Positions 11,201 through 61,755 of a stretch of DNA of 64,000 bases are shown here, in pieces. This DNA comes from Lepidodermella squamata (Eukaryota; Animalia; Gastrotricha). The position numbers and the translations under genes are program-made. Within the stretch, counting starts at the first letter, position 1, and the number at the start of each line of letters is the position of its first letter. The DNA is taken from contig JBLDXI010000024.1 of assembly GCA_047495785.1 (NCBI GenBank), positions 2,356,001 to 2,420,000 on the forward strand, written 5' to 3'. The notes beneath the pieces were generated by a model. It did not search any database. It saw nothing but the letters and a program-made list of their open reading frames with translations, and was not told where the DNA came from.

Positions 11201-12431
11201 TATCCACTACAGTTGTACCTTTACTCCGGGGCGAGCAGTATCCTTACCTTTCTGGTTCAAGGTGTTTGGATCCTCTTATTGATATCAGAAACCGTGAAAA
11301 TTGCGTATCAAATCAAGAGAAATGGTTTCAAGGCCCATTTTACGGACGGCTGGAATATTCTAGAGATCATCTCCATCGTCGCGGCCTATTGTATCATTGG
11401 CCTCTTTATCACTCGAATCCTGATTTGCATTGAGGTGGTTACAAAAATTCAGACTGATCGGAGTTCCTTTACTGATCTTGACCCTCTCGTATTTTGGGAC
11501 GAACTGATGGCTAACATTATTGGGCTAACTTTCTACATGACTTTGCTGTTGTTCTTCCGAAATCTCAAGTTCCTGAAGCATTGGTGTACCTTCCTAGGCA
11601 CTATGTCGAAAGGAAAGAATGATCTGATAACTTTCACCGTGGTTTTCGCCGTCATTACTCTGATGTTTGCCGGGCTAGGTTACTTGACCATGGGGAATGT
11701 TCGAACTGAGTTTCGGTCAATAACAGCTTCGATAATGACCCTGATTCAGAATATCATCGGAGTCACTGGGAGTTTGATAGCACTAGGCGTCCAGTCTCGT
11801 TTTGTTATGATCTACTGCATTGCTTACTCGACGATCGTGATGTTTCTTGCTGTTCAAGTTTTCATGACAATTGTTACGGTAACCTACGATCGAGTTGCGT
11901 CGAACGTCGAGCGAAACACAGACTGGGACAGGGAGATGGCTGAGTACATGGCAGAGGAATGTCTCAAGCTGATCTCACCGAAGAACACGAATGAGAACCG
12001 CGACGAAAGGACAATAGATGGAGATGGACCTTTTTCTGAATGTAACTTCTTTTTCCCCCAAAATTTTCTAACTATCCCCAATTTTGTTTATAGTGGAATG
12101 CGCTCTTCTCCGACTGGAAAGATACGTTGAGGCAATCGTAGAAAACGGCTACATTTTTGAAGAGAATAAACGGGTTAAATGCTCTATTCGCTGGATGGAA
12201 CAAAACTATCGCCCAACTACAGATGATGCAGAAAGCGTGTGGTATGATGCCTGCTCGGATCCAGCCGTATTGAGTCAAGCACCAGGCGGCCGCCGCCGGC
12301 CACTTAAGATTCAAGAAGTCAAACCGTTGTTTCCGGTTAAACTCGAGCAACCTGGTGGAATGTACTACAACTTTTTCAAACGGTTTAATGAACATGAAAT
12401 TTCGAAGACCGATCAGAACTATATGAAATAA
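5223..12431 (+). CDS. Polycystin-1-like (PKD1L) protein: signal peptide, 3 EGF repeats, Thr-rich mucin stalk, GAIN-like region, PLAT domain, multi-TM polycystin channel domain; in-frame TGA at 10499
   Basis: Signal peptide MKPKLMGHLVEIASFLCILAILL; EGF exons 5363-5800; Thr-rich exons 5850-7420; PLAT-like YRYLVSV..VFIRLMGEG; DNHTWISVF..WTRAERLSC motif; LGPIRIRQQRV and WLDNATSVVFVDFVLYNAQINLF polycystin-channel motifs. Confidence 0.88.
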
Positions 12432-32770: not shown

Positions 32771-33195
32771 TTAAAAAAATTTAAAAACGTGTTTAGTCTG
32801 GGTTACTGAATGAAGAAAAGATGAAATTCAACTGATACAAACTTTTACGATCCTGCAGAACAGTCCGACCCTGGAGGAACTAGTATCACCCCCCGTTCAC
32901 TAGTTTCACCCGTATCACAAAGCCTCATGGTTCAGGGTTTATTGAATCTGGAAATCCGAAAACTCGAACAACCCATGGCCTAGCTTTTTAGAAACTCGAC
33001 CTGGAATTATTGAGCCGAAATCCGGATTTTTTGTTACATCATAGTGTAGGGCGACTCATTAATTTAAAAAAAAAATACTTGAAAAATACGTCACGCCGTG
33101 ATAAAACACCTAGATGTTCATGACAATCCGAAGTTATTGTCCATTTGATAAATCTTAAATCTTGACAATTTGAGACTATGGGAGATTCCTTTAAA

Positions 33196-35199
33196 ATGGC
33201 TTCAAAATGTCGTTTGCTTGAAATTCGCAGCTCATTGGCTTTATTTATCATTGCATTCTGCGCTGCCATTATGATCTTCATCGCGTCATCCCGTTTGGAG
33301 CCGTCTTATCAACCGCTCGCCGCCCAAACTCAGCCAGATGTCGACATCGCGAATGTAACAACTCAAACGCCAACAACTCAAACGCCAACAACGCAAAAGC
33401 CAACAACCCAAACGCCTACAACGCACAAGCCAACAACCCAAAAGCCTTTGCAGAGCCTTTCCAAGAGCGTATTCCCGGATGACCCACATCTTGACCGGCA
33501 AACGCTGGAGATGTTCAAACAGTGGCTACGTGATCGCTACATCAACGGCTCTGTGGCTAAGCAACTGGCTGCTGGCCGTGCCAACTTCGCAATTTACCAT
33601 TGTGATAGAATTGAAATGAATGGGGACAAGTGCGGCGGCTGGGGCGACAGGACTCGAGGCATGGTTACCGTTTTCTACCTCGCGATTCTTACCGATCGTG
33701 TATTTTGGATGCGGCATTTCAATCCGACCCCAATTGAGCGCTTTTTCAAGCCATATTATCCGGACATGCCTCAGGTTTGTTTTCTCGGGGGTTTTTTCTG
33801 GGGTTGTATGGCAGCAGTTATCAGTTCAGTCGAGCGCTAAGTTTTGGGATAGAGATAACCCTGAGATGTTCCGAAGAGGACCAGTCCTCCGATTGAAAGA
33901 AATTCTGGAAATTCCACTGGAAAGAAATTATAAAGAAGTGTGCGCGAATTTTGAAGAAAATCGTGATTTAAAAATTCGTTAAACCTTTGTTGACTGGTTT
34001 GAAGTAGCAAATTTTAGTTAGAGAAGTTGATTAATACGAGATTGCACAATCGCAGATGCCATTTTTAAAGCCTAAAGCCTTCGACGCTATCAAGGAGGGT
34101 ACTTCTTTTTATTGCCATAACACTGAGAAACAAATAATGAAGGATAAATTAGGGCGAAAAGGATGATTCAGGGTGAATAAGAATGCGAACAACGCTGAAC
34201 AATGTTCTGCAATTCGATTCTGAGAGGAATAATGATTGATTAGGATAAGGTTAGGGTCCAAATATTTGCACCACTAAAACTTAGATTATGTTGTCACTAT
34301 TAAAAATGAGCGCTCGACTGATGAAAACAATGATGTTTAACCGCGTTTTTTTGATGTTGCAGGCGATTATTGGCGAAATGGCTGCTAATGCCTCAGTGCA
34401 TAGGATGACCAACGATAATTCGGCCAGATTTTTCGCCACGCCAGGTTTTAATGCAGTCCACGCGAAGGAACGCTTCTTGTCAATGGCAACCAACCTGGAA
34501 ATGTCGCCGCTTTTTGCTCGCAATTCCGTGTTTGACAACGCGGACTTTTCTACAAAACTGGATCACTATTTTCGGGAATTCCCGCGATTCTCGCAGCTTA
34601 ACCAGGTAACACTACAAGCAGCAGCTATTGGTCTACTTCTCTCTCAACCGACAACTGAGCTGACGTCGGCATTTCAGAAGGTTTTAGTGAATCGATGGAA
34701 TATCCAACCTGAAGAATGGCGCCGTTTAACGAAAATCGGCCTACAACTGCGCTTTCATCTGACTAAATGGAATGAAGGTGGCGGGCGCATTTCGACATCG
34801 CAAGTTCCTTGCTTTGTCGAAGAGTTGTTACGCACAATCAAGCAGCTGAGCTACGTCGATAGAAGTAAAGTCCTGGTTTATGTAACAAGCAGCGATGTGA
34901 AAGCAACACAGGCGGTGGCTGCGTTTTTGCAGGTTTCCGGCTTCCGCACGGTCACAATTGAGGGCCCGACGTATCACGTTGATCGGTTGGCGGCAAATGT
35001 GAATGGGGATGAGGCTATGCTTAGCACGTTGGTGGACTGGTACACGTTATCGCAGATGGACAGGTTAATTGGCAGTAAGAGCGGGTTCCTTAAATCTGCC
35101 AGCCTTGTTCGCACCGTTCCCACTCGTTTGTTAGCTCATGGTCGCTCGGCGGCTCAATCGACGTGCATTTTCGACGACTTCATTGTGCCCATCAACTGA
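33196..35199 (+). CDS. Type II membrane fucosyltransferase-like protein (GT23/NodZ/GT11-type fold), 3 exons
   Basis: TM anchor; Thr/Pro stem; CGGWGDRTRG; motif I GLQLR; motif II VYVTSS; motif III DWYTLSQMDRLIGSKSGF. Exons about 33196-33773, 33842-33936 and 34363-35199. Confidence 0.78.
33358..33447 (+). repeat. 15-bp coding tandem repeat (TTQTP/TTQKP x6), mucin-like stem
   Basis: ACAACTCAAACGCCA-like units. Confidence 0.85.
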
Positions 35200-40477: not shown

Positions 40478-41964
40478 CTAGGTCAAGTATTTAGTTTCTT
40501 CCATTTTAACGCCAATTTTAAGTGAGACGAAGCTCATTTGCTCTGATAAATAGTCTTCAAACGTGCAGGTTCCAATCAGCCTTCGAGTTGGTTTCAATGA
40601 AAATCTAGCCGCAGATTCGCCCATACTATCCGAAGCCACAACTAGCATGTCCATTCTCGTCATAACGTACCAATCTACAAAATCTCGGTCGATAGACGAA
40701 AGCCCAGGATAAGCGTCGTAGTTGATAGCAATCAGCGATAATTTATGCCGATTTTTGCCGTCTTTCGTTCGAAGATCGAGTCGAACAGCGGCTTCAAATT
40801 CAGCCGACGAGACGGCCTCGCTTCGAATTATGATGATAAAATTTGAAATTTCAGCCAGATCGAATGCAATTTGACGTAGTCGCGATCGCACTTCATTCGC
40901 GTAGCAATCAAGGTGAACTAAAATTTAAAAAAAAGTCCTCCTTAATATTTTAGATTTTTTTTCGAAATTTGTTACCTCTATTTCTGATTTCAACTCCTAA
41001 TTTTATCGCATTTTTCCATTCATCGTCATCCATTTTTTTTGAGACCACCTTGCTGGATATTTCCGTCAATTTTTCACTCGGTTGGCTGAAAATAGACTGC
41101 AAAGCCGCAGAAATTATCGGTGAATAATCGCCCGTATTGCACAACTTGCTCCAAGTTTTGTTTGAAAACTGAATTTTCAAAAATTGCATCAAGCCCAGCA
41201 AATCGATCCGACATGACGAGTAAATTCGGCGTTGGCGAGGCGGTCGAAAAAAAATCCGGCGATGCCAGCTCGTCGTAATAAATTTGATCGCCCAGATCGT
41301 GGCGATGCAGTAACCACAGCGCCTTCGTCGATTTTTTCGCCAATTTCTGCGTGAAATTGAACAAATCCGGTATATCAGCGTCGATTGAAAATCGCCGGCC
41401 TGTAGCGATGGCGAGGTAGAACGCGACGACGATGCCTCGGAATCTTTCGTTAAGGCCCGGGCAAGAATGTTCGACAACCTGGCAGGAATAGCGACGACCC
41501 TCCCCGGGGTCGACCGGTTCAGGCTGGCGACGAATCGCGGCGAAATATTGATCGAAGCAGTCGGACTTTTCATGGTCAAATCGGCACGTCGCTGTTACGT
41601 AGCGCCGAGCTTTCGGCGGCTTATCGAGGTAGTTCTGCCTGATGGCCGTTGCTATTTCCAACGCTTTTTTCTGCTTTAATTCGTAGGCTTGTGCGAGTTG
41701 GCTAGCAATAAAAGCATCACTACGCAGCTTTTCTAGGTCATGATTTTGCTCTGGCGTAATCAGGTCACGACGCTTTGTGACCGGTGATTCATCATCAACA
41801 GTGCTGTTATCTGTTAATAGGTCAGCCGCATTTTCTGAGCCTGATGATGCAAATTTCAGGATTAGCAGAGATGCGATAATTATGAAAATTAGACAGAAAA
41901 CGGCCTTTAAATGCGCGGCTACAAGTTCAACAAATTTTCGCCATTTTTCTAGAAAAACGTTCAT
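40478..41964 (-). CDS. Second fucosyltransferase-like type II protein, divergent; frameshift or small intron near 41100-41146
   Basis: CPGLNERFRGIVVAFYLAIATGRRF, FSQPS, GVEIR and VDWYVMTRMDMLV align with the 33196 gene. Confidence 0.65.
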
Positions 41965-42147
41965 TTTCACTAATAAAACTAAGACTTTGACTGGCATGGA
42001 ATCTACTACGCCCATTCGACGCTGTGTCTATCCCTTTCATTCTCACATCTTTTGACAGGCTGCCCCATTCATCGATCCAGGGTATGACTTCTCTCGTGAA
42101 AAGCAGAATATTCGGACATATTCATCGTTCATTCAACTATTTTCCTT

Positions 42148-44146
42148 TCATAGATACGGTAAATAAACCAGAAAAAAATAATTTATTGTTAAAAATACTG
42201 AACGGTGAAATTCATTTTTTCAGGTAAATGTCTCGCAGTTTCCTCCCGGTTTTGATTCCTTAGCCATAATTCAAGGGATCTTAAACCACGACAATCGTCG
42301 AAATCATCGGGCAATTCGATATCAGCCTCCATCGCTTTGCCTACATCGGAAAAATAAATTAAAAAAATTGATAGACCTATTTTTCAACTACCTATTAGGG
42401 TCGAAATTCCAGTCAATCGAACTAGGTAAGCGTCATGGTCGTTCATTCCGAGACCAATGATGAGGCTGTTGGAGCTATCGATTATGAGACCAGTGGAAAA
42501 TGGCAGTGGAAATCGGAATAAACGGCTGTAAAATCCGTAGATTTTTCGGTGCTTCGTCATTATTGATTTATCGATAAAAATCGGCGAGGAAATTAGGACG
42601 ATTCTTTGCAGCCTCACATTTATTAAAACCAGCTGAATGGCGTAATCTAAAAAATTTGAATAAAATTAAAAAAAATTAAAAACGTAGGGGGACAAATAAG
42701 ACGAGGACAAATACGACGGGACAAATAAGAAGAGGACGATTAAGATAATTTATTATTAATTTTATAACAGGACAATTAAGACAAATAAGACGAATAAAAA
42801 ATAACAGTATTATTGGGCTTTTTGGTTGGGATTTTGGATTTTGGTTAGGGTTAGGGTTAGGGTTTATGGATAGGATCAGGATTAGTCTTATTTGTCCCGT
42901 CTTATTTGTCCTTGTCTTAATTGTCCTCGTCTTGATTGTCCCGTTATAAAATTAATAATAAATCATCTTAATCGTCCCCGTCTTATCTGTCCCGTCTTTA
43001 TTGTTAATTGTCCATATCTTAATTGTCCTGTCTTATTTGTACCCTTTCCATTAAAAAAATTTCAGACTTACTTCGAAGGTGATTTATCATCTCTTGACTG
43101 TGGGTTATTGTCAGGTAATAATCGCCAGAATATTGTAGGACAGGTGATCCGCCTCGAATTAAATGATCTTCTCGCGTTGAATTTTTCCTCTTGAATGTTT
43201 TCACCCGATTTTCGCAAACTTTCGCCGGCTTCACGAATTTGCATAATTTATATTTCGAGCCGAAATTCGGCTTTGAATGATCACGGCATTTATACATGAC
43301 GATTTGCGGTGAAAAACGGGTTATTAAATGCAAATTTCCATCGATAACCAGCGGTACAAAATTCTTCTGACAGGTCGAGTTCGAAAATTCGGGCGAAAAT
43401 TCTAAATTGAACAGCTCACGGTCTTCAATAGACCACAAATAGTGACGTCTAAAAAAATCGAATAATTTTCATAAAAATGAAATTAATTCCTCTTACCCTT
43501 CTAAAAATTTATGGGTCACGTAATTTGTGAAGTAGAGCGTGAATAATTTCCCGCCGATTTCGAACAGTCGAGGGTCTTGAAGGCCGTTATCTCGAGCTCC
43601 AGCATCAGGCCAACTCGCGATAGGGATGCTCAAAATTTCACCAGATTTTTCAATAACTCGATAATTCGTTCGATCAAGCTCGAGATAATAGATGTAATCA
43701 CTCGGGAAGTATCTCTTCATCGGCGGTTTTTTCCTAGGCAGGACATTGCCATATTGCATCCAGATTCGAACAATACAAGCTAATCGATTTCGATCGCTAG
43801 GTTTCACAACGCAAGATGGGTGGATAGGGCGAGGTTGGAAATGCCGAGTGTCGATATCGGCGACCACATCGGGGAACATTGCCCGAAAATGGCGTAAAAC
43901 TCCGGTTTCAAAGTCGTGCAAAACTGCGGTTTTGACCAGGCTGGAATACTGGAGAATCATGCTTAGATTTCTGGGGTTTGTCGAAGCTGCGGATAGGTTG
44001 AAGTCGAAGTGATGAGATTCGAAGTTACTAGCCATTTCGGAGGTGATTCCATCTTCTTGTTGGTTAAGAAGTTGAAGTAAATTTAGTGAAATTGCTGTTA
44101 TTAATAAAACAGTGCCACACCATCTCAAAGTCGCAACTTTTCGCAT
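42148..44146 (-). CDS. GT91 (BMT)/GH130-like beta-propeller glycosyltransferase candidate, paralog A, 4 exons
   Basis: TM anchor, HPSC, GLQDPRLF, QKNFVPL, LIRGGSP, ISSPIF, G.G.ND. Stop position approximate. Confidence 0.7.
42683..43049. mobile_element. Intronic foldback MITE with ~15-bp subrepeats (GGACAAATAAGACG) and a central (TTAGGG)3
   Basis: Inverted arms about 42686-42795 and 42885-43045; ATTAAAAA on both flanks; TTAGGG x3 at 42845-42862. Confidence 0.8.
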
Positions 44147-44184
44147 TGGAAAAATTCTAAAAAATTGCGAAAAAGATTCGAATT

Positions 44185-45752
44185 TTAATTAATAATCTCA
44201 GGTTTTGCGAAATATTTTTCAGCAATCAATCTGTATTGTTCATCAAGCCACAATTTTAGGTTGCCAATTTCGGATTTCGAATTTTTCCTATCAGCTGCAA
44301 TGGCGGATTTGAGCATGTCTCTGAATCCTTCCAGCCGGACAAGAACGGCAGCTCGATCGTTGATACCAGTGCCGTAGACCAGGCTGTTGTCGCTTTCTAA
44401 GATTAAACCAACTGCGAATAGATACGGGTTTTCGACGCTGTACAGCCGATAAGGATGACCATTATCGTGATGCGTGAATTGAGGATTAGGAATCGATCTC
44501 ATAATTTTCGGGTCAGTGATAATAGGAGAGGAGACGAAAACAACGCGAAGATTCCGAAAATTTACCAAAGTTAATTGAATAGCATAATTATGACCTGAAA
44601 ATTGAAAAATTATTAATATAATTTTTTATAAAATTTCAATTTCTGAAATCGATTTTCAAAATTTCAAAATTTTAATTTCAAAATTATAACCTCTCGCGCT
44701 ACTATTCGACGCGTGTCTTGAGTGGGTTATTGCCAGAAAATAATCCCCATCGTATTGAACAGCCGGGCTTCCGCCTCTGAGAATCAAAGCTTCCTTTTTC
44801 GATTCAGATTTTCCTCTCCCCGATGTCGATTCGACCAATCGACAGCGCTTAAAAAGCGCCCACCTCAATGCGCCATTCTTCGCTTCGTCTTGACATTTCA
44901 GCAATCGAAAATTTGGCGAAAATTCGTAGATGAAATGAAGCTCATTGTCTATGGCAAGAGGTACCCAGTTTCGCTCGCGATTTCCAAGCTTCACGCCATC
45001 AATTTCTAGATTATACAGATAATTTTCATCTACGGAGTATAAAAATTGGCGCCTACAGCAGAAAAATTCCTATAAAATTGATTTAAAAGTTAAGGAATTT
45101 TTACTCACCCCATGTCTCTTTTCCCTTTTTTCCAGTGATTGTAAAACGTGAAATAGACTTTGCCGTCCAATTCGAATAATCGAGCGTCCTCAACACTTCG
45201 GCCCAGAGTTCCACCAAGACCAGGGTATGCCATAGTCGGAATTTCGACCAATCGCCCAGTACCAGGAATGATTTGGTAATTACGGTCCAATTCCATTAGA
45301 TAGATAAAGCTATCTTGGTACAAACCCCGGTTAGGCTGGTTCTGCTTGTACAGCTGACTATTTTGCATCCAAATTCTAACGGTACAAATGAATCTATTCC
45401 GATTCCCAGGATAACGAGGGGCACATGATGGATGGAAGGCGAGGGGTTGAAAATAATCCTTTTCGAGCAGTGAATTTTTCGGAAACATTTTCCAAAAATG
45501 ATTAATGACTCGATGCGTGAAATCGGCCAAAACTCGGGTCGAAACGTTGGCAGAAATTTCGCGGGTTAGAGTCCCATTTGAATCCGGAATCAAGCCATTA
45601 ATGGTGAAGTGAAAATTCGGATGTTCAACGGCACCTTGAAATTGCGGATTTACCAATCGATTCGCCAATTTTCGAGCGGCCAGAAAAATCAAGCAAAAAA
45701 TAATTAAATAATTAAAAATAACATTCCAACGTATTTGAAGAGATTTTCTCAT
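44185..45752 (-). CDS. GT91/GH130-like glycosyltransferase candidate, paralog B, 3 exons
   Basis: SVEDARLF, ERNWVPL, ILRGGSP, VSSPII, GTGIND. Confidence 0.7.
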
Positions 45753-45783
45753 TTTTCTAAATTGAAAATAAATGAAAAAATAA

Positions 45784-47565
45784 TTATAAATTTATTGTTT
45801 TTCGATGTTTTCTTTCCGCAGCCCTAGCTGCAAAAATTCGATTCATAGCCGACATTTCTTGGCATTGTTCAGGGAAGTGAAATTCCAGTTCGCGTTTATT
45901 GAATAACCGAATTTGTTTTTCAAATTGTAGGTGAAGCTTTCGAGGTTCAATATCTGGCGAAGTTTCGTCAGCTTTTATCGCCAAATCTGACAAATTTACA
46001 CAAAAATCGATTTTATTCAATTAATCAAAGATTTTACCCATCATTTTCGAGAATCCTTCCAGGCGAATCAGATAAGCATCATGATCATTCAGACCAACGC
46101 TGACAACCATGCTGTCGCGGTGTTCCAGGTACATGCCGATCGAAAATATCAGCGGGGTGAAGAAATACTTGGCATAGTGACCGTTTATATACCGCTTTTT
46201 AACCATTGTTTCCTTATCGAAAATAATTGGCGACGAAGCGAAAACAAGTCGCTGCTTTCGCACGTTGAACAGGACGATTTGAATGGCATAAACTGGAAAA
46301 ATTAAAATTAAAATTAAAAAAAATAGAAAATTAAAATTTCGAATTTCGAAAATAAAAAGGGATCCTTTTAGGTCCAGTTGGAGTAATATTCCAAAAAATC
46401 GAAAAAATCGGACAGGTAATGCTGAAATTCATTAATTTAAGGCTGGAACTTCAGAATTAAAAATGTGTAGACCCGGAAAATACTTACTCGCTACCTGTTC
46501 AGGTGTTTCCTTTGAGTGTGTAACAGTGACGTAGTAGTCGCCGGAATATTGCACACTCGGCGAGCCGCCTCTAATAAAAAGCTTCGATTTTATCGGCGCA
46601 ATTCTAAAATTCTGCCCAGTTTCTCGCTTTACGAATTCGCATCGCTTGAAAAAGGCCTTCGATTGCTGATATTGATGATCGTCGCATTTGAACATCTTGA
46701 AATCAGGCGAAAATTGGTACACGAAATGAAGATCGTTGTCGATGATGAGCGGTGAGAAATTCTTCTGATACATCGACTCGGTCAAATTTCCAGGCAACTC
46801 GAAATTAAACAATTTATTGTCCTCAATCGACCATAAATATTGACGTCTAAAAATTTTTGGAAAAATATAAAAAAATCAACCTTAAAAATATTTATCTTAC
46901 CCATTTTTCATCTCTTTCCCCTTGAAATTATTCAAAAAATTGAGGTAAAGCTTGTTATCAAAATTGAAAATCCTAGCGTCTTGAGGACCAGTTTTCGCAT
47001 TCGCATCAGGATAAATCGGGACAGGCATTGGTAAAAAGCGTCCCGAATTCGGGACATAGGTGAAATTTTCGAAAAGTTGCAACAAATAAATCGAATTTAA
47101 CGGATACATTGGCCGCTGTTTCTCGTCAGATTTGAGGCCCAAATTGAAATACTGCATCCAAAATCGGATCGAACAAACAATTCGGCGATCACCATTATTG
47201 GAGTGAGGTACACAGCTAGGATGCATTGGCCGGGGCTGGTAGAATTTCGAATCGTCGACTACAACACTTGGAAACATTTTCGCAGCTTCGTCGAGAACAA
47301 AGTGCTCGAAATCAACCAGGATCGAAGTTCGGACATTCGCACTGATATTTGCGAGCAAATCGTCCGATTGCTGTAAAATCAGCCCATGAAGCGTGAAATT
47401 CATCGGCTTAAAACCAGAAGCTTGATGAGAATTCAAAGTCGCAGCATTTTTCATGCATTTTCTAAGGAATTTTCCGCCATTTCCAAGGTAGAAAATTGTC
47501 AGGAATAGCGATAGGATAAGCGCATGAAAAGCAACAGTTGACGGTTTAGGAATAAGGAGTCTCAT
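45784..47565 (-). CDS. GT91/GH130-like glycosyltransferase candidate, paralog C, 4 exons
   Basis: GPQDARIF, QKNFSPL, FIRGGSP, ASSPII, VGLNDHD. Confidence 0.7.
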
Positions 47566-47633
47566 TATCTTAAAACCTAAAATTAAACAAAAATTAGTAA
47601 AATTTCCAACAAATTGATAATTTATAGAAAATA

Positions 47634-49271
47634 TCAGCAAACAGTTGTTGCAGCATCGGGAAAAAATCGGTCGAATTCTACATCATTTCGATATCGTAGC
47701 CATTTTTCCATTTTAAGGTGGAGATCGCGAGATTTGACCTCGTTTCCGACATTTTGATCGGCAGCAATCGCCATTTCTAGAAATTATGTTAATTTAATTT
47801 ACAAATTTTCGGAAATTAGATTACCCATCGTGCTGCGAATGCCTTCGAGTCGAACTAACACAGCATCATGGTCGTTAAGACCAACTCCAATGACCAAGCT
47901 ATTGCCATTTTCGACGTAAAGCCCCGTCGAAAATATCATCGGGCAGTAGAAAAATTTCGAGTATTCGCCGCGAATCACCCTCGGCTTCGTCATAACTGAT
48001 TTATCGAAAAATATCGGCGATGAAATGAAAACCAACCGCTGGTCTCGAATGTTGGCGAGAACAAGTTGAATCGCAATTCCTAAATAGGATTCATGAATTT
48101 TCTAATTGAATTAATAATTAACAGTTACTTCTTTTCCCATTTTTGCCATGTTTGAATTCTTTGGTATGAGTAACCGCGACGTAGTAGTCACCCGAATATT
48201 GAATAGCCGGCGAACCGCCTCGAATCAGCAGTTTTTCATTCCTTGGAGCTTCTCGAATTTTCGCCGACGCCTTAGTGACAAAACCGCAGGATTTGTACTG
48301 GCCTCTGGAGTTTGATTTAACAATATCTCGGCATTTGAGTAGTTTAAAATCGGGTGAAAATTGGAAGATGTAGTGAAGTCCGTTTTTAAAGGTAAGAGGA
48401 GCAAAATTTTTCTGGTATTTCGATTCGGTCAAATTGTTGCCGATTTCCAAGCCGTAAACAGATTTTTCGTCAAAGGACCAAATGAACTGCCGACTAAACC
48501 GGAAAAATAACAATTAAGTAGGATAATTTTGAAAATTTTTGAAATTTTCTAAAAAATTTAATTTTCTCACCCGGCTCCAGCATAATTTCCAATATAGTTG
48601 TTCAGGTAATTCATGTAAAGCCTTCCTTGAAATTCGAAGATTCTCGCATCTTGAAGTCCGTTTCTCGCATCGGGCGACGGCCAACTCGGTATAGGAATCG
48701 GCACAAGCATCGCAGAATTGGCCACATAATTAAAATCAGCATCGAGCTCGAGCATCATAGCCGAATTTAGCGGATAATAAGGCCGCATAGGGCGTTTTTC
48801 CGGCATGAAATTCTGGTATTGCATCCAAATGCGAAGAATGCAGACGACTCGATTCGCATTTTGACCTGGTTTCGGGACACAGGACGGGTGCATAGCTCGT
48901 GGGTGGAAGAAGGACGTGTCATCGCTGATCAGGCCGGGGAACATTTTTTCGAAATTTTCCAAAGCCATCGGGGTGAGATCGGCGAGGACAACGCTTTTAA
49001 CCGATGAATTAACCTCGCGAATTCCTTCATCCGAGTCGATAATAGCCCCGTAAAGGGTGTATTCGAAGCCAGTCCGATTTCGAGCGGCCCCAAGTCTCGT
49101 TTTATAGCTAATTTTCGATGACGAAAAGACGTTCTCGGATGGTACGCCATGCCAAAAGAAGAAATTGACGATGCAGAGAGCAATTGAAAGGGCTAAGGCT
49201 AGTTGGCATCGAAAAATGTAACGGTACAACTGAATTAAAACCGCTGTCATTTTGTAGCGCAGGAATCGCAT
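47634..49271 (-). CDS. GT91/GH130-like glycosyltransferase candidate, paralog D, 4 exons
   Basis: GLQDARIF, QKNFAPL, LIRGGSP, ISSPIF, VGLNDHD. Last exon EMAIAAD...ATTVC* ends at 47634. Confidence 0.7.
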
Positions 49272-54368: not shown

Positions 54369-54549
54369 TAGTTAAGTAATAATAGAATAATAATACCGAC
54401 GCGCTCCCAGACAAGTGCGAAGCTTATCCGGAGCATTGGGCTGATGTGCTACATCTCAGAATTGACCTTTAACCTCACTTTTTTGCAAGCTTTATTCTGT
54501 TTTAGCTTAAAATTCGATCCCGTCAATACGTGTTAAATTGAGAACTAAC

Positions 54550-56760
54550 ATGCGGCAACCGACGAGATTATTTGTAAAATTAGCTCTTCCGGTTGTTATT
54601 CTCCTCGTTTTGATCGCTGCTGACCTTCTCAACCAAGATAGATTGGGCAAATGGATAGAACAGGCGTCAGCTTCTTTGGAATTTCCAGAATCAGCGCTGT
54701 TGCCATGCGCAAGGCTGCCGACATTCGAGGCGCGGAACGAGACGTGGAAAATCCCTAGAATTCTGCATCAGTCGTGGAAAAACGAGACCCTGCCCGAGCT
54801 CTACGCAAGGTTCCGCCAGACGTGGCTCGACATGCACCCCGACTGGCAGCATCACCTGTGGACGGACGAGGAGAACCGGTTGTTGGTCCAGTGCCACTAC
54901 CCGTGGCTGTTGCCGTACTACGACGCGTTCCCGGTCGGAGTTCAACGGGCTGATATCAGCCGGTTGTTGTACGTGCACCACTACGGCGGCATCTACTCGG
55001 ATCTGGACACGGAGCCAATGAAAACCATGGACTCGCTGTTGAGCAATTATTCGGATCAGCGCATACTTTTAAGTGGGTTTCTATTCATTTATCATGTTGA
55101 AAAGAGGGGTGAGATCGAACATCGAACATTATAGAGACGATTGAAATGGCGAAAATGCCTGCGATTGAATATGGACAAAACGATATAGAAGCGTCGAAAA
55201 TAGGGGTCAAAAATGTAACTGACGACTTGGCGAGTGTAAAAATTCAGTTTTTTTCAATTTCACTCACCCATTATCGAAAAGCCAAGTTGCCCTAGTTAGC
55301 CACCATCGAGCCTAAAACGTTTCCCCATAAAAACAAGAAATCACAATCCATTTGAGAATCCATTGAAACAACCAATCGTTTTCCTTGAAACTATAATTTC
55401 TACTATACATTTTTATACCCATTTTTTTCACTCAAAACCTGTGAGCATCCAATTCATTTATTTTATATTTTATTTTATTTCAAATTTAGCTCTGCTCTGG
55501 ATTTCTATAATATGATGCTAATCTGCCCGGAATAATGCAAAATTCATATCATTCTAAAAGGTGATTTTCGTGTGCAAACCTTGGTCGTCGTTAGTCATTT
55601 GCGTATCACCTGAGGCGACAATTCAGAATTTGTAGTAATTAATTTTAATTAATACAACGTAACGCAACAAAGATATTACACGGAAACAGGTCTAAAATGA
55701 GAGACGTAACATCTCATGGCCAGAAAAATTTGAAAAATCATGAGAATAGAAAAAATTCCGGATAAATTTGGTCCAACCGGGTAAAATACCGATAATTACC
55801 GAACCAGTTACCATCGGGGTGTTCTCCGGTAAGTCTGTTATTTCTTCGGTTAAATCGCGGATGAAAGACGGAACTATCTCTCGGTTTGATTTTTTTAAAT
55901 TATAGTTGAATTTCCTATAAAAAGTTGCTCAACTTCTGGGACACGCTGTATGAACATGCGATTTTAAACTGAAAAAAAAAGATTGACAATTTTCAGCAGC
56001 TTTTTTTTGACCACCGAGCTCCATGTGATGCAATTTCTAATAATGGTAATCGTCAGATTTTCAGAATTCGAAAATCCTGGAATTTTTTTTGAAATTTTCA
56101 AAATCACTCAGAAAAAAATTCAGATTTTTCGAAAAATTTCTTTATGATATTATACTAAAAGAATGCAAATTTTGCGATTTTTGTTTAATAGGCTACATGA
56201 GCAAAAGCTACCATATGGAAGACAACGTACAAGCGGCTTGGATGGCGTCAGCGCCCGGGCACCAAATCTGGCTTCTCACCGTGCTGAAAAGTACTTTACT
56301 CAGTCAAAGTCTGCCGAAATCCACACGGTGAAAAGAATAAAAAAAATTGCTAAAAAACCCGAATTTTAAGCTACTTGATTTATTCAGCCCCGATTACGTC
56401 ACCGGACCTGCAGTTCTATGGGTGGCTCTGGGCGACTATTGGCGCATGTGGAGAGCGAAAATGAGTGGGCCGAAAATTGCTGGAAATATCGTGCTGAAAG
56501 GTGCGAGGAAAATTCGAGACATTTACATGTTGGAGCCAGGCATCATATTTCCTTACCACTCGTACGAAAATGAGAAGCCGATTGGCAAAATTTGCGATCC
56601 TCATAAAGCGACGTTCAACACAACGGCGTGCAAGGCAAGTTTCCCCAACGCCTACGTCATTCAGTACTCTGGCTATTCGTGGCAGAAGGACTGGGAAGGA
56701 TTCCTCAACGCCAACGGCTTCAAGAAAGAAACGTTGTACTTCGAACTGAAAGAAAATTAG
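54550..56760 (+). CDS. GT32 glycosyltransferase (SUR1/CSH1 MIPC-synthase/OCH1-like mannosyltransferase), paralog 1, 3 exons
   Basis: TM anchor; KIPRILHQSWK, LWTD, RADISR, GGIYSDLD (DxD), MAS.PGH, TGP. Exons about 54550-55072, 56192-56327 and 56388-56760. Confidence 0.88.
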
Positions 56761-57661
56761 CCGAAATAATAGCGCTAGAGAATGCAATAATTTAATGTAA
56801 TTATTGTAATAATTAATTTATTAATTAGGTATTTAATGTAAAAATTTAATGTAATGTAAAAAATGAAGCTTGTTTTGTGATTTTGTGACTAATTTTGTGA
56901 CAAGGAAAAATAAATAAATTGAATACAAAATTTGTGTCCTTTTAGTATTTTGAACTCATCAACTTTCTCACCCATACTTGCACCCTATTTTTTACTCCAT
57001 CTTCTTCAGCATTGCATGGTTCTTGGGCTTCGAACAGGTAATCGAACAGCCGAATTTTCTGTATGGGTCCTCCTTTTACCGGAACCAAGTTTAAAGTCAG
57101 CGGTCAGCGGAACCTAATACAGCTTGCCCCATTATAGTAACGCAAACAAAGATAATACACGGGAAATAAGGGTTCAGAAACTCCAAAATGAGACGCGAAG
57201 TTATAATATCTCACGCCCAGAAAATTCTATGATCTTAAAAAATTATGTCTACGGCTTTTTCAGATAATTTTAGATTAACGTTGGGCGAGTGGGAAGTTGA
57301 GCGGATTAAGTTGGGCGAACGGGAATCACCCGCAAAATCATTGTATTTTATTAAGTTTTTTTTAAATTTGAATCACATTTTAAATTTTATTATTACTATG
57401 AAGCTCTCTATTGCGATTTCTTTCTAATCAAAGCCCATTAAACACAATTTTGTCCGAAATAAGACCGCGTTACAGTATTAATGTAGGCGAAATATTATAT
57501 AATTACTGTCACCTTAAAAAAGCTGGTTACACGCGTCCCAGGAACGCGTCCATTAGGCACGCGTGCCGATTTATTTCGCGGGAATTTTTTCTAATTATGA
57601 CTTGTGATCTTAATTTTATCAGCTATAAGTAGTAACTTAATCCGAGTTTAACATACAAAAT

Positions 57662-59509
57662 ATGCAGAAACCGGCTAAATTGCTCAAATCAGCCATCCCA
57701 GCACTTTATGTTTTCATCGCATTGATCGCAATTGAGCGTCACAGGCAGAATGGACTTGAAAATGACAGCATGGAATCGGCGCCAGCGTCTTGCAGTAATC
57801 CACAGCCAGCTCTGTCGCCGTGTGATAGTTTACCTAAATTCGAGGCGAGGGAAGAAAGGTTCAAAATTCCTAGAATTCTGCACCAGTCGTGGAAAAGTAA
57901 GACCGTGCCTGAGCTGTACGCCCGGTTCCGCCAGACATGGCTCGACATGCACCCCGGCTGGCAGCACCACCTGTGGACGGACGAGGAGAACCGGTTGTTG
58001 GTCCAGTGCCACTACCCGTGGCTGTTGCCGTACTACGACGCGTTCCCGGTCGGTGTTGAACGGGCTGATATCAGCCGGTTGTTGTACGTTCATAAATACG
58101 GCGGGATCTACTCGGATCTGGACACGGAGCCGATGAAAACTATGGACACGCTACTGAGCAATTATCCCAGTCAGCACATTCTTTTGAGTGAGCCCTTACC
58201 ATATGATTTTAATATAATGAAAGAAAAAATAGGCTCCTAATTTCACCCGATCCAATATCACTAGTATCGGGGTTTCAAGTGCAAAAATACTTGTTCTCTG
58301 CAACTCTGACTTGAACTTTCAGGGTTGAATTTTTTTGAATTTTTCTCTCTTAATTGATCATGATGCACCCTACATCTTGGAGCTTTTATTAGCTAGCTTT
58401 TACCTGCAAGTATAGTATAATTAAGTTGGCCTAAGAGCTACTGTTATAATCTCTGATTCTTCAAATAGGTATTTCAAAATAAGAGGTTCCCATAGACCAT
58501 AGAAGATTCGCAACTATTTTGTAATTTGGCAACGTTATGTGAGAATAGTAACTAATTTTTTTCCATATCGAGAGAATATTCCATCTTTTTTCGCGATTTA
58601 GCCGAAGAAATAGACAATTTACCAGAAAAAACCCGTAAAAACCCGATTGTAACTTGTTCGGAAATTTTCGGTATTTTGCCCAGTTGGACCAAATTTATCC
58701 GGACTATTTTTAATTCCATTAAAAAGTTACATACCTACTTGATTACTTTTCTCGTGATTTTTTGAAATTTTCTAAAATTTTTCTGGCCAAAAATTCGTCT
58801 ATCACTTCAGAGTTTCTGAACCCTTTTCCGTCTATTTTCTTTTCTTGCGTTACTCTTGGGACTTACCATTTAGGTTCCGGTAAAGTAGTTTAAGAACTAA
58901 CAGCACTAAGAACAGAACTAACAGAATTGCTACCGATTTCTAATGGTTAGGCTACATGACCAAAAACTACCATATGGAAGACAACGTACAGGCGGCTTGG
59001 ATGGCGTCAGCACCCGGGCATCAAATCTGGCTTCTCACGGTGCTGAAAATTACTTTTCTCAGTCAAAAATTGCCGAAATCCACACGGTAAAAATTTCGAA
59101 AATACCCGAATTGGGAATGATCTTAATCTTATTCAGCCCTGACTATATCACCGGCCCAGCTGTTCTCTGGGTGGCTCTGGACGATTATTGGCGAATGTGG
59201 AGGTCAAAACACAGTGACGCGAGCATTGGCAGTTATAGCGCTGCGAAAGGACCTAGACAAATTCGAGACATTCACATGCTGGAGCCTGGCTTGATATTTC
59301 CCTACCCGTCTTACGATGCCTACCAGCCGATCGGTACAATTTGTGACCCTCATAAACCGACGTTCAATACAACGGCGTGCAAGGCGAGTTTCCCCGACGC
59401 CTACGTCATTCAATACGCCGGCTATGCATGGGAGCAAGACTGGACTGGTTACCTCAAGGCGGCCGGATTCAATCGAGAGATGTTATTTCACGAGTTACAA
59501 GACGATTAG
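57662..59509 (+). CDS. GT32 glycosyltransferase paralog 2, 3 exons
   Basis: Same motifs and intron positions as paralog 1. Confidence 0.88.
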
Positions 59510-60201
59510 TTTATTTTGACATTATTTAATAAATAAATGTGTAAACTGTAAGAACAATGCTAATTTGGTTACATTTCTCATTGATTGATTGATAGATTGA
59601 TTGATTTTCACATCGATAATCGATAATTAATAGTCGATTTTTCGCAGTTTTCATCGAATGATATCGTATATATAAACATGGTACGCGGAGTTCAAAATTC
59701 ACAACCAAATCACCTGAATCCTAACCGATAAAAATTGATACCAGGATGGTTGGCGATGCGTTCAGCTCGTGGCTTATACGAAAAATGTCAATTTTAACGT
59801 CAATTTCAAGTCGGTGACCCGCTATAGTTACAGAATAGTGAGTTACGTATATTTTCATTTTTCAAGAAACTTTGTGGTACCACAGCAAGTCGAATGGATC
59901 ACCCTTTTACATTAAATTGATTTTTTTATTGTTCAGAAAATTCATGTCAAGTTGTTGACAGGTGGCTAGAACAGAGGGAAATAATTTTTTCGGCAAAACG
60001 TTCAAGACAAAAAATTAAAAATTCAAAAAGTGCGCCAAGTGGCGCGTGGCGAGGTGCTCGCCTCATCGTGATTTTTCACAAAAAAACAACAGTAAAACGG
60101 TGCCAAGTCGATGTACAGAAGAATTTTCTATTTATTTTTTCGAGCACTCTACGCCGGAATTCACCGCTTTAACCCTCCAATTTGAGTGATTTCAAGCTAG
60201 A

Positions 60202-61755
60202 ATGTGGATGCCGAATAGATTCTTCAATCTCGCCTTGCTAGGCACATGCCTTCTTGCAATAATCGTCGTTTTAGTCCACCTTAAAGATGAAAATAATGAT
60301 TGGATTAAAATGCCGTCCATCTCTTGGCAATTTCCAATTTCCAATGTGAAATGTCCAAGGCAATCCCAAGATTCAGCTTCTTCAGAACCCTGTGCAAGGC
60401 TGCCGAGATTCGAGGCGCGGAACGAGACGTGGAAAATTCCCAGAATTTTGCACCAGTCGTGGAAAAACGAGACCCTGCCCGATCTCTACGCCCGGTTCCG
60501 CCAGACGTGGCTCGACATGCACCCCGGCTGGCAGCACCACCTGTGGACGGACGAGGAGAACCGGTTGTTGGTCCAGTGCCACTACCTGTGGCTCCTCCCC
60601 TACTACGACGCGTTCCCGGTCGGAGTAGAACGGGCTGATATCAGCCGGTTGTTGTACGTGCACCACTATGGCGGCATCTACGCAGATCTGGACACGGAGC
60701 CGATGAAAACCATGGACTCGCTACTGAGCAGATATTCAAATCATAACGTCATTTTAAGTAAGCCAATATTTTTTATTAGCTACCACCAAAATTTTCAGAA
60801 AAATTCTAAAAATCACAAGAAAAACAATTAAGTATGCCAGTAGTTAAAAAGTCTGGAGAGATCAGGTTCAGGGAAGGCATAAGTATCGATCAAAAATCGA
60901 CTACGCCGAAATCAGAAAAATGTAGTGCCGGGACCTCATTTTTAATGGTGCAAAAAGAGTGTTGGCTTTTTAAATCATTCGAAAAGCATAGTATTCGAGA
61001 TAGGCCTATGCATCGACGAATTTCAATTTACCTAGGCTTCTAATCGAGACAGGCTTCTAAACGAGTGGGGGCTTATATTTCGGTAACTACGGTATGCTGT
61101 AAAAATTAGCACTTTCAGTTTCAGCAGAGTTTCAGAAGTATTAGCGCTTGATGAATAGTCTACAAATTTTCAATTTCCAATGGTTAGGTTACATGACCAA
61201 AAACTACCATGTGGAAGACAACGTACAGGCGGCTTGGATGGCTTCGGCACCTGGACACCAAATCTGGCTTCTCACTGTACTAAAAAGTACTCTACTAAGT
61301 CAGAAATTGCCGAGATCCGTACGGTATATAAAAGAAAGTTAAATTGCGTAAAACCCTGCAATGATTTGGAACTTATTTTCAGTCCTGATTATGTCACTGG
61401 ACCAGCTGTTCTTTGGGTGGCTCTGGACGATTACTGGCGGATGTGGAGGTCAAAACACAGTGACGCGAGCATCGGCAGTCATAGCTCTACAAAAGGGCCT
61501 AGGCAGATTCGAGATATTTACATTCTAGAACCTGGCTTGATATTTCCGTACCCGTCATACGATGCCTACCAGCCGATTGGCAGAATTTGCGATCCTCACA
61601 AACGGACGTTCGATCCAGCGGCGTGCAAGGCGACTTTCCCCAACGCCTACGCCATCCAATACGCCGGCTATTCATGGGAAAAAGACTGGAATGGTTACCT
61701 TAAGGCGGCCGGATTCGATCGGGAGATTATATTTAAAGAGTTAAAAGACGATTAG
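60202..61755 (+). CDS. GT32 glycosyltransferase paralog 3, 3 exons
   Basis: Same motifs (GGIYADLD) and intron positions. Confidence 0.88.

What the first reader, a model, noticed from the sequence alone, without database searches (positions are those of the whole stretch)
40478..49271. Candidate eukaryotic operon of glycosyltransferase genes resolved by trans-splicing
Seen: four co-directional paralogs are separated stop-to-start by only 68 bp (47634 to 47565), 31 bp (45784 to 45752) and 38 bp (44185 to 44146). Each spacer is U-rich and ends in an unpaired TTTAG acceptor 11, 4 and 10 nt before the next ATG (e.g. TAAttattttttcatttattttcaatttAG aaaaATG). AATAAA/ATTAAA signals overlap the last codons or stop of paralogs C and B. 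The fucosyltransferase-like gene ~180 bp further on also has TTTTATTAG 5 nt before its ATG (41964). Known: this layout marks spliced-leader-resolved operons in nematodes, tunicates and flatworms. Inference: a 4-5 gene polycistronic glycan-synthesis unit that arose partly by tandem duplication.
Basis: partly seen in the sequence, partly recalled or inferred. Interest (0 to 1): 0.85.

Follow-up and report, generated by a model that had tools for sequence, protein, structure and literature searches.

The report
Tightly packed four-paralog operon candidate
Four old tandem copies of a rare mannosyltransferase-like gene lie only 31-68 bases apart in a small invertebrate genome, a layout that best fits one shared transcript cut up by spliced-leader trans-splicing. 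The available RNA data could not show this, and the fifth gene seems to start on its own.

Summary
Four intact, co-directional, intron-bearing paralogs (A-D, 471-493 aa) are separated stop-to-ATG by 68, 31 and 38 nt. Each spacer is about 80% A+T. Each ends in a TTTAG acceptor 11, 4 and 10 nt before the ATG, and a poly(A)-type hexamer lies at or near the upstream stop. The acceptors score like this locus's own intron acceptors and are unlikely by chance.

The proteins are type II membrane proteins of a very rare family (17 hits in 1.84 billion proteins). The family is related to fungal GT91 beta-mannosyltransferases and has a GH130-type propeller fold. The four copies form one clade, so they arose by tandem duplication.

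Polycistronic transcription and trans-splicing are not shown. The single RNA-like run confirms two introns and expression of B, C and D, but has no contigs over the spacers or the 5' ends.

For the fifth gene (E, 224 nt downstream) a cDNA runs straight through the proposed acceptor and ends 30 nt upstream of the ATG at a template-switch oligo. That suggests its own start site.

Earlier notes of this scan report spliced-leader genes and many operon-like clusters on other DNA of this genome; I did not test them. My verdict is a probable (about 0.55) four-gene SL-type operon, a new member of a known kind.

The parts
47634..49271 (-). Paralog A, first gene of the run. Exons 49271-48571, 48493-48129, 48079-47825, 47776-47634; 487 aa; N-terminal hydrophobic anchor.
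47566..47633 (-). A/B spacer, 68 nt, 85% A+T. TATAAA at 47626-47621, TACTAAT branch-point-like motif, acceptor TTTTAG ending at 47577, 11 nt before the ATG.
   Evidence: In the second haplotype of run X2 the spacer is 60 nt, and no listed difference touches the AG.
45784..47565 (-). Paralog B. Exons 47565-46901, 46846-46488, 46292-46038, 45986-45784; 493 aa.
   Evidence: Intron 46900-46847 is skipped in an X1 contig.
45753..45783 (-). B/C spacer, 31 nt. AATAAA of B at 45796-45791 lies 32 nt ahead of the acceptor TTTAG, which ends at 45757, 4 nt before the ATG.
44185..45752 (-). Paralog C. Exons 45752-45109, 45052-44691, 44594-44185; 471 aa. It lacks the third intron of A, B and D.
44147..44184 (-). 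C/D spacer, 38 nt. ATTAAA at 44189-44184 spans the stop of C. Acceptor TTTTTTAG ends at 44157, 10 nt before the ATG.
   Evidence: No sampled word of this junction is held by the RNA-like run X1.
42189..44146 (-). Paralog D. Exons 44146-43497, 43448-43072, 42646-42392, 42340-42189; 477 aa. Intron 2 (425 nt) holds an inverted-repeat insertion.
   Evidence: The exon 1-exon 2 junction is seen as a loose end in X1 at 43449.
41965..42188 (-). D/E spacer, 224 nt, ordinary composition (30% T). AATAAA of D at 42187-42182. A cDNA 5' end lies at 41994/5 in a CCAGTC context. The weak acceptor TTTTATTAG ends at 41970.
40478..41964 (-). Gene E, a fucosyltransferase-superfamily look-alike. Exons 41964-41146, 41096-40976, 40917-40478; 459 aa; type II anchor. 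Probably a separate transcription unit.

Best explanation
A to D are four anciently duplicated, still functional genes for Golgi-type (type II membrane) beta-mannoside enzymes. They are most likely transcribed from one promoter upstream of A (above 49271) as a polycistronic precursor.

Proposed mechanism:
- Each upstream cistron is cleaved and polyadenylated 10-30 nt after the hexamer that lies at its stop codon.
- The next cistron receives a capped spliced leader at the TTTAG acceptor 4-11 nt before its ATG.
- This would be an Oikopleura-like operon with very short spacers.
- Tandem duplication of a unit that carried no promoter of its own would explain why all copies stayed this close together.
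- Gene E, 224 nt further on, is a separate unit with its own start site.

Shown here: the gene structures, the spacers and signals, expression and splicing of B, C and D, the common origin of the copies, the fold and family, and the 5' end of E.

Inferred: co-transcription, the cleavage sites and addition of the leader.
For: - Spacers of 31, 38 and 68 nt between a stop codon and the next ATG leave no room for a conventional promoter plus a 3' UTR plus a 5' UTR.
- All three spacers end in acceptors that score like the locus's cis acceptors. No donor inside a spacer could make an intron of the size used here, 48 nt or more.
- Poly(A) hexamers lie at the stops of B, C and D, 26-32 nt ahead of the next acceptor.
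- The four genes are 34-45% identical, all intact, share intron positions and form one clade. They have therefore been kept for a long time and must be expressed.
- X1 contigs cover exons of B, C and D but hardly cover introns, and they show two spliced junctions.
- The second haplotype in X2 changes spacer lengths by indels (60/32/38 nt), yet no listed difference touches an acceptor AG or a hexamer.
- Three GT32-type tandem duplicates 5 kb away keep spacers of about 700-900 nt, so duplication alone does not explain the tight packing.
- Known SL operons have comparable spacers: a median of 31-33 bp in Oikopleura dioica and about 100 bp in C. elegans (PMC7986045).
- Earlier notes of this scan report SL RNA gene families, and a leader on the last gene of another four-gene cluster, in this genome. 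These are leads that I did not test.
Against: - No leader, no RNA spanning a spacer and no start-site data exist for A-D. X1 depth over the 5' ends of B and C is 0-0.1, and none of 13 sampled words of the C/D junction is in X1.
- No SL RNA gene lies in the window.
- The one 5' end that could be read in this stretch, that of E, is not trans-spliced.
- Earlier notes also describe junctions in this genome that turned out to be an ordinary intron or a very compact promoter.
- A has only a variant hexamer (TATAAA), which could equally be read as a TATA box 58 nt before the ATG of B.
- In C. elegans, genes in operons are poor in duplicates (PMC2739200), so an all-paralog operon is atypical.
Confidence: 0.55

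Rival explanations
1. Four independent, extremely compact transcription units. Each downstream gene has its own promoter inside the upstream gene's last exon or spacer. The TTTAG motifs are either unused or serve leader addition to monocistronic transcripts.
For: - Gene E, next in line, shows its own template-switch-tagged 5' end only 30 nt before its ATG, without a TATA box.
- A/T-rich spacers contain TATA-like strings: TATAAA at 47626 and TATAAT at 45788.
Against: - In the 31 and 38 nt spacers the core promoter, the upstream gene's poly(A) site and the 5' UTR would all have to overlap.
- A TATA-like string 30 nt before the ATG would leave a 5' UTR of only a few nt.
- The joint chance of three good acceptors at 4-11 nt from the ATG is about 7e-5.
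- The GT32 duplicates nearby keep 700-900 nt spacers.
Confidence: 0.28
2. One promoter with a shared non-coding first exon upstream of A. This exon is cis-spliced alternatively to the acceptor in front of A, B, C or D, so the transcripts are alternative mRNAs rather than a trans-spliced operon.
For: Acceptor-like sites also lie 38-60 nt upstream of the ATG of A. The acceptors in the spacers have no donor nearby.
Against: - No candidate leader exon was identified.
- Poly(A) hexamers at every stop argue for 3' end formation of each cistron.
- Reaching D would need introns of up to 5 kb in a genome whose introns at this locus are mostly about 50 nt.
Confidence: 0.07
3. A mature polycistronic mRNA in which the downstream reading frames are translated by reinitiation or leaky scanning.
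For: The spacers are very short.
Against: The upstream reading frames are about 1.4 kb with many internal ATGs, which makes reinitiation or leaky scanning implausible. Each stop carries a poly(A) hexamer and each ATG a splice acceptor.
Confidence: 0.03

Closest known systems
Oikopleura dioica operons (single SL, intercistronic distance up to 60 bp, median 31-33 bp; PMC7986045)
   Same: Same-strand genes tens of bases apart in a compact genome with about 50-nt introns. The acceptor lies just before the ATG. The 3' end signal lies at the end of the upstream gene.
   Different: The leader is not shown here. The organism is an unidentified spiralian according to earlier notes, not a tunicate. The genes are four paralogs rather than unrelated genes.
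Caenorhabditis elegans SL2-type operons (about 100 bp intercistronic regions with a U-rich element)
   Same: A poly(A) signal followed by a U-rich spacer and a trans-splice acceptor close to the ATG.
   Different: The spacers here are two to three times shorter. A specialised second leader is unknown here. C. elegans operons are depleted in duplicated genes (PMC2739200).
Ciona intestinalis operons (median intercistronic distance 1 bp; PMC7986045)
   Same: Very tight packing resolved by one leader that is also used on monocistronic genes.
   Different: Ciona usually has no intercistronic region at all. Here distinct 31-68 nt U-rich spacers remain.
Tandem gene arrays inside trypanosomatid polycistronic units
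   Same: Repeated paralogs in one transcription unit, each with its own acceptor and coupled polyadenylation.
   Different: In trypanosomatids all genes are polycistronic and lack introns. Here the genes have cis introns, and neighbouring genes seem to have their own start sites.
Fungal Bmt/Wry beta-1,2-mannosyltransferases (GT91, Pfam PF12141), GH130 mannoside phosphorylases and GT108
   Same: Type II anchor. Relatives of A-D reach the PF12141 threshold. There is a GH130-like five-bladed propeller and a conserved (E/Q)D(P/A)R motif.
   Different: GT91 is described as a fungal family without a solved structure (PMC8476585). The window's own exon pieces give no Pfam hit. These are animal genes with introns. 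Their activity is unknown.

Membership tests
Spliced-leader-resolved eukaryotic operon | Two or more same-strand genes with spacers too short for a promoter | tested here: met
   68, 31 and 38 nt from stop to ATG
Spliced-leader-resolved eukaryotic operon | A 3' splice acceptor without a cis donor just upstream of each downstream reading frame | tested here: met
   PWM scores of 5.1-6.7 bits, in the top 2-4% of AGs. No donor in a spacer could give an intron of 48 nt or more. This is sequence-level evidence only.
Spliced-leader-resolved eukaryotic operon | A 3' end formation signal of the upstream gene ahead of the acceptor | tested here: met
   AATAAA or ATTAAA at the stops of B, C and D. A has only TATAAA.
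Spliced-leader-resolved eukaryotic operon | The organism has SL RNA genes and adds a leader to its mRNAs | not tested
   There is no Rfam hit in the window. Earlier notes of the scan report SL gene families and leader-tagged RNA on other DNA of this genome.
Spliced-leader-resolved eukaryotic operon | The leader is joined to the downstream mRNAs at the spacer acceptors | tested here: inconclusive
   The one RNA-like run has depth 0-0.1 over the 5' ends of B and C, and no loose end was listed at 47577, 45757 or 44157. 22 loose ends were not shown. The C/D junction words are absent from X1.
Spliced-leader-resolved eukaryotic operon | A polycistronic precursor or a single start site | not testable with these tools
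   The only read-laying run was used. No raw RNA reads are on hand.
Spliced-leader-resolved eukaryotic operon (gene E as fifth member) | The leader is joined at the AG at 41970 | tested here: not met
   X1 contigs are colinear from 41926 to 41995. One contig continues into a template-switch oligo (...CAACGCAGAGTACATGG) at 41994/5. This rests on a single contig.
GT91 beta-mannosyltransferases (Pfam PF12141 BMT) | A match to PF12141 at the gathering score | tested here: inconclusive
   Exon pieces of A, C and D give no hit. Among 10 relatives, 8 hit BMT; two of these pass the cut-off (30.0 and 29.3 against 28.3) and the rest fall below it.
GT91 beta-mannosyltransferases (Pfam PF12141 BMT) | Type II membrane topology | tested here: met
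   A hydrophobic 19-mer within the first 40 residues of A-D, Kyte-Doolittle 1.8-2.0
GH130 / GT108 beta-mannoside phosphorylase fold | Five-bladed beta-propeller of GH130 type | tested here: met
   AlphaFold2 model of relative P0008 built with alignment A2, which contains the window's exon pieces: pLDDT 85. The top Foldseek hits are all GH130, E down to 4e-11, and include Leishmania MPT-4. Profile A2 hits 7fip with E 0.0034. The model is of a relative, not of a window protein.
GH130 / GT108 beta-mannoside phosphorylase fold | A match to Pfam PF04041 | tested here: not met
   No hit for the window pieces. There is only one faint hit in one relative, E 0.0096.
Fucosyltransferase superfamily (gene E) | A sequence match to a fucosyltransferase family | tested here: inconclusive
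   No Pfam hit and no homologue by word search. Language-model look-alikes are XG_FTase, O-FucT and FUT8 clusters, best score 0.94.

The most novel reading that the evidence does not exclude
An animal operon built entirely by tandem duplication of a promoterless cistron. One ancestral GT91-like beta-mannosyltransferase gene multiplied inside its own transcription unit, and each copy was kept for a long time because spliced-leader trans-splicing makes promoterless copies expressible. This would have happened in a spiralian lineage for which neither operons nor this enzyme family have been described. It would be a route of operon growth opposite to the paucity of duplicates seen in C. elegans operons.
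Probability: 0.3. Interest if true: 0.55.

Novelty: new member of a known kind. Interest (0 to 1): 0.35.

Why it matters
If RNA data confirm it, this locus would show that operons can grow by internal tandem duplication. In that case trans-splicing lets promoterless duplicates survive, which is rarely seen in the well-studied nematode operons. It would also tie a very rare animal family of fungal-type beta-mannoside enzymes to coordinated expression, inside a 29-kb neighbourhood rich in glycan-building genes. On present evidence it is one more operon-like cluster in a genome where the scan has already noted many.

Tried and rejected
- Rfam scan of the whole window for SL RNA or other RNA families: nothing.
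- Pfam on exon pieces of A, C, D and E: nothing usable.
- Word-based homologue search with exon 1 of E: no hit.
- Exact-protein look-ups. The 2OG oxygenase gene of the window and relative P0008 are not on record, so no transcript contigs of this organism could be fetched that way.
- Contigs of relatives P0002, P0003 and P0004 carry single copies, not tandem arrays. Conservation of the tight arrangement could therefore not be tested.
- The second sequencing-run search, on the C/D junction, found only DNA-like holders.
- The 5' end of the LINE at 13053 was read in search of a leader copy: nothing recognisable.
- The bacterial promoter and terminator scan is irrelevant here and was at chance level.
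- I considered Dimorphilus gyrociliatus as the source. Its genome paper excludes trans-splicing and operons (PMC7854359), which would conflict with the scan's earlier RNA notes. The organism stays unidentified.
- I considered whether the 5' end of E is a strand-invasion artefact. The RNA upstream of it is not G-rich, so that is unlikely, but the end rests on one contig.
- Spliced full-length proteins of A-D could not be handed to the search or fold tools by reference. Exon pieces and a full-length relative were used instead.
Full report
**What is there.** The stretch is eukaryotic, with short GT..AG introns. Splicing the reading frames by hand gives four complete genes on the minus strand:
- A: 49271-47634, 487 aa.
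- B: 47565-45784, 493 aa.
- C: 45752-44185, 471 aa.
- D: 44146-42189, 477 aa.

Each gene has three introns at matching places, except that C lacks the third. A fifth, unrelated gene E follows at 41964-40478, with three exons and 459 aa. The only run that behaves like RNA (X1) supports the models. One contig skips B intron 1 (46900-46847). A loose end at 43449 carries the end of D exon 1. Contig depth is high on exons of B, C and D and near zero in D's long intron.

**Check of the observation.** The stop-to-ATG spacers are exactly 68, 31 and 38 nt. They are 50-58% T and about 80% A+T. They end in TTTTAG, TTTAG and TTTTTTAG at 11, 4 and 10 nt before the next ATG.
- A weight matrix from 11 cis acceptors of these genes gives the three sites 5.1-6.7 bits. 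That lies within the leave-one-out range of real acceptors (2.0-13.5) and in the top 2-4% of all AGs on the strand.
- Shuffling each spacer puts a TTTAG that close to the ATG in 3-7% of trials, jointly about 7e-5.
- AATAAA or ATTAAA lies in the last codons of B, across the stop of C and just after the stop of D, 26-32 nt ahead of the next acceptor. A has only TATAAA.
- Genes of the window with long upstream regions have no such acceptor within 12 nt of their ATG.
- The D-to-E spacer is 224 nt, not about 180. It has ordinary composition, and its acceptor is weak at 1.2 bits.

**What the genes are.**
- A profile of the four first exons finds only 17 proteins among 1.84 billion cluster representatives, with a best E-value of 4e-18.
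- Eight of ten relatives hit Pfam BMT (PF12141, fungal GT91 beta-mannosyltransferases). Two of them score just above the gathering threshold.
- A profile that includes the window's exons hits a beta-1,2-mannobiose phosphorylase in the PDB at E 0.0034.
- An AlphaFold2 model of the full-length relative P0008 (pLDDT 85) matches GH130 mannoside phosphorylases throughout the top of the Foldseek list, and also Leishmania MPT-4.
- The language-model atlas places the family in a small eukaryotic cluster whose known members are mostly annelid.
- All four proteins have an N-terminal hydrophobic anchor and an invariant Asp in a (E/Q)D(P/A)R motif. That this Asp corresponds to the GH130 catalytic Asp is my recollection, not a test.
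- "Glycosyltransferase-like" is therefore fair at superfamily level. GT91 itself is described as fungal and without a solved structure (PMC8476585).
- The four copies are 34-45% identical and form one clade, (C,(D,(A,B))), with 96/93 support against the relatives. This means old, lineage-specific tandem duplication at the DNA level.
- Gene E has no Pfam or word-search match. It looks like xyloglucan, O- and alpha-1,6-fucosyltransferase clusters by language-model features. It has a distant paralog at 33178-35199 on the plus strand.

**Is it an operon?** The positive case is indirect.
- C and D have been kept intact for a long time and are expressed, yet only 31 and 38 nt separate them from the preceding stop codon.
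- That space must hold the upstream poly(A) site, and it ends in a good acceptor with no donor to pair with.
- Both haplotypes in run X2 keep the arrangement. The spacers are 60, 32 and 38 nt in the other allele, and no listed difference touches an AG or a hexamer.
- Tight packing is not simply what tandem duplicates do here. Three GT32-type duplicates 5 kb away sit 700-900 nt apart.
- The dimensions match known SL operons: a median of 31-33 bp in Oikopleura and about 100 bp in C. elegans (PMC7986045).
- Earlier notes of this scan report SL RNA gene families, leader-tagged RNA, and a leader at the predicted spot of another four-gene cluster in this genome. They also report many similar operon-like clusters on other DNA. 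I could not test those notes; they are leads.

**What is missing.**
- X1 is shallow. Its depth over the 5' ends of B and C is 0-0.1.
- No loose end was listed at the three AGs, although 22 loose ends were not shown.
- None of 13 sampled words of the C/D junction is held by X1.
- The window has no SL RNA gene.
- So neither the leader, nor a precursor, nor a single start site is shown for A-D.

**The fifth gene.** X1 contigs are colinear with the genome from 41926 through the proposed acceptor at 41970 up to 41995. There one contig continues into ...CAACGCAGAGTACATGG, the 3' part of a SMART-type template-switch oligo. Allowing for the oligo's last G, this puts a cDNA 5' end at 41994/5, 30 nt before the ATG, in a CCAGTC context that resembles an initiator. 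The upstream RNA is not G-rich, so strand invasion is unlikely. The observation rests on one contig. E is therefore best read as its own transcription unit.

**Rivals.**
- Independent compact promoters inside the upstream genes remain possible (0.28). E shows that a start site 30 nt before an ATG exists here, and the TATAAA after the stop of A could be a TATA box.
- A shared cis-spliced leader exon (0.07) and a mature polycistronic mRNA (0.03) are less likely, given poly(A) hexamers at each stop and 1.4-kb upstream reading frames.

**Verdict.**
This is a probable four-gene, not five-gene, SL-type operon of tandem paralogs, with confidence 0.55.
- It is a new member of a known kind. The unusual points are that all cistrons are paralogs, which contrasts with the reduced duplicability of operon genes in C. 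elegans (PMC2739200), and that they belong to a very rare GT91/GH130-like family in animals.

Noticed in passing
window 54538-61755 (+): Three tandem GT32-type genes (Pfam PF04488, DXD sugar-binding region), each with a long first exon and a later exon, spaced about 700-900 nt apart. They are transcribed divergently from the A-D run across a gene-poor gap of about 5.2 kb. Together with A-D, E and E's paralog, this makes nine type II glycan-enzyme genes of three families in about 29 kb.
   Followed up: partly
window 42647-43071 (D intron 2), element about 42690-43004: An inverted-repeat element (76-nt arms, 88% complementary) with a (CCCTAA)n-like core swells this intron to 425 nt. Run X2 also holds an allele without it (joint 42673 to 43055) and has roughly five-fold depth over it. 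It is a low-copy insertion polymorphism.
   Followed up: partly
window 33178-35199 (+): A distant paralog of gene E, with a shared C..G..R.RG....FYLAI.T.R.F motif and a shared C-terminal block. It has a Thr/Pro/Gln-rich mucin-like stem. The family has no Pfam model.
   Followed up: partly
window 41900-47700, run X2: Two haplotypes that are 5-10% apart in some segments and identical in others (allele-specific contigs at about half depth). The RNA-like run X1 and the DNA-like run X2 carry different organism labels, yet most of their contigs match the window at 99% or more.
   Followed up: no
window 44185-44594 (C exon 3): Paralog C has lost, or never gained, the third intron that A, B and D share at the same place.
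   Followed up: no
L003 (metagenome scaffold), gene at 10001-10993 plus 11093-11413: The closest relatives of A-D come from metagenome scaffolds of another compact-genome animal, whose neighbours include ligand-gated channel and proteasome genes. There they are single-copy, not tandem.
   Followed up: partly
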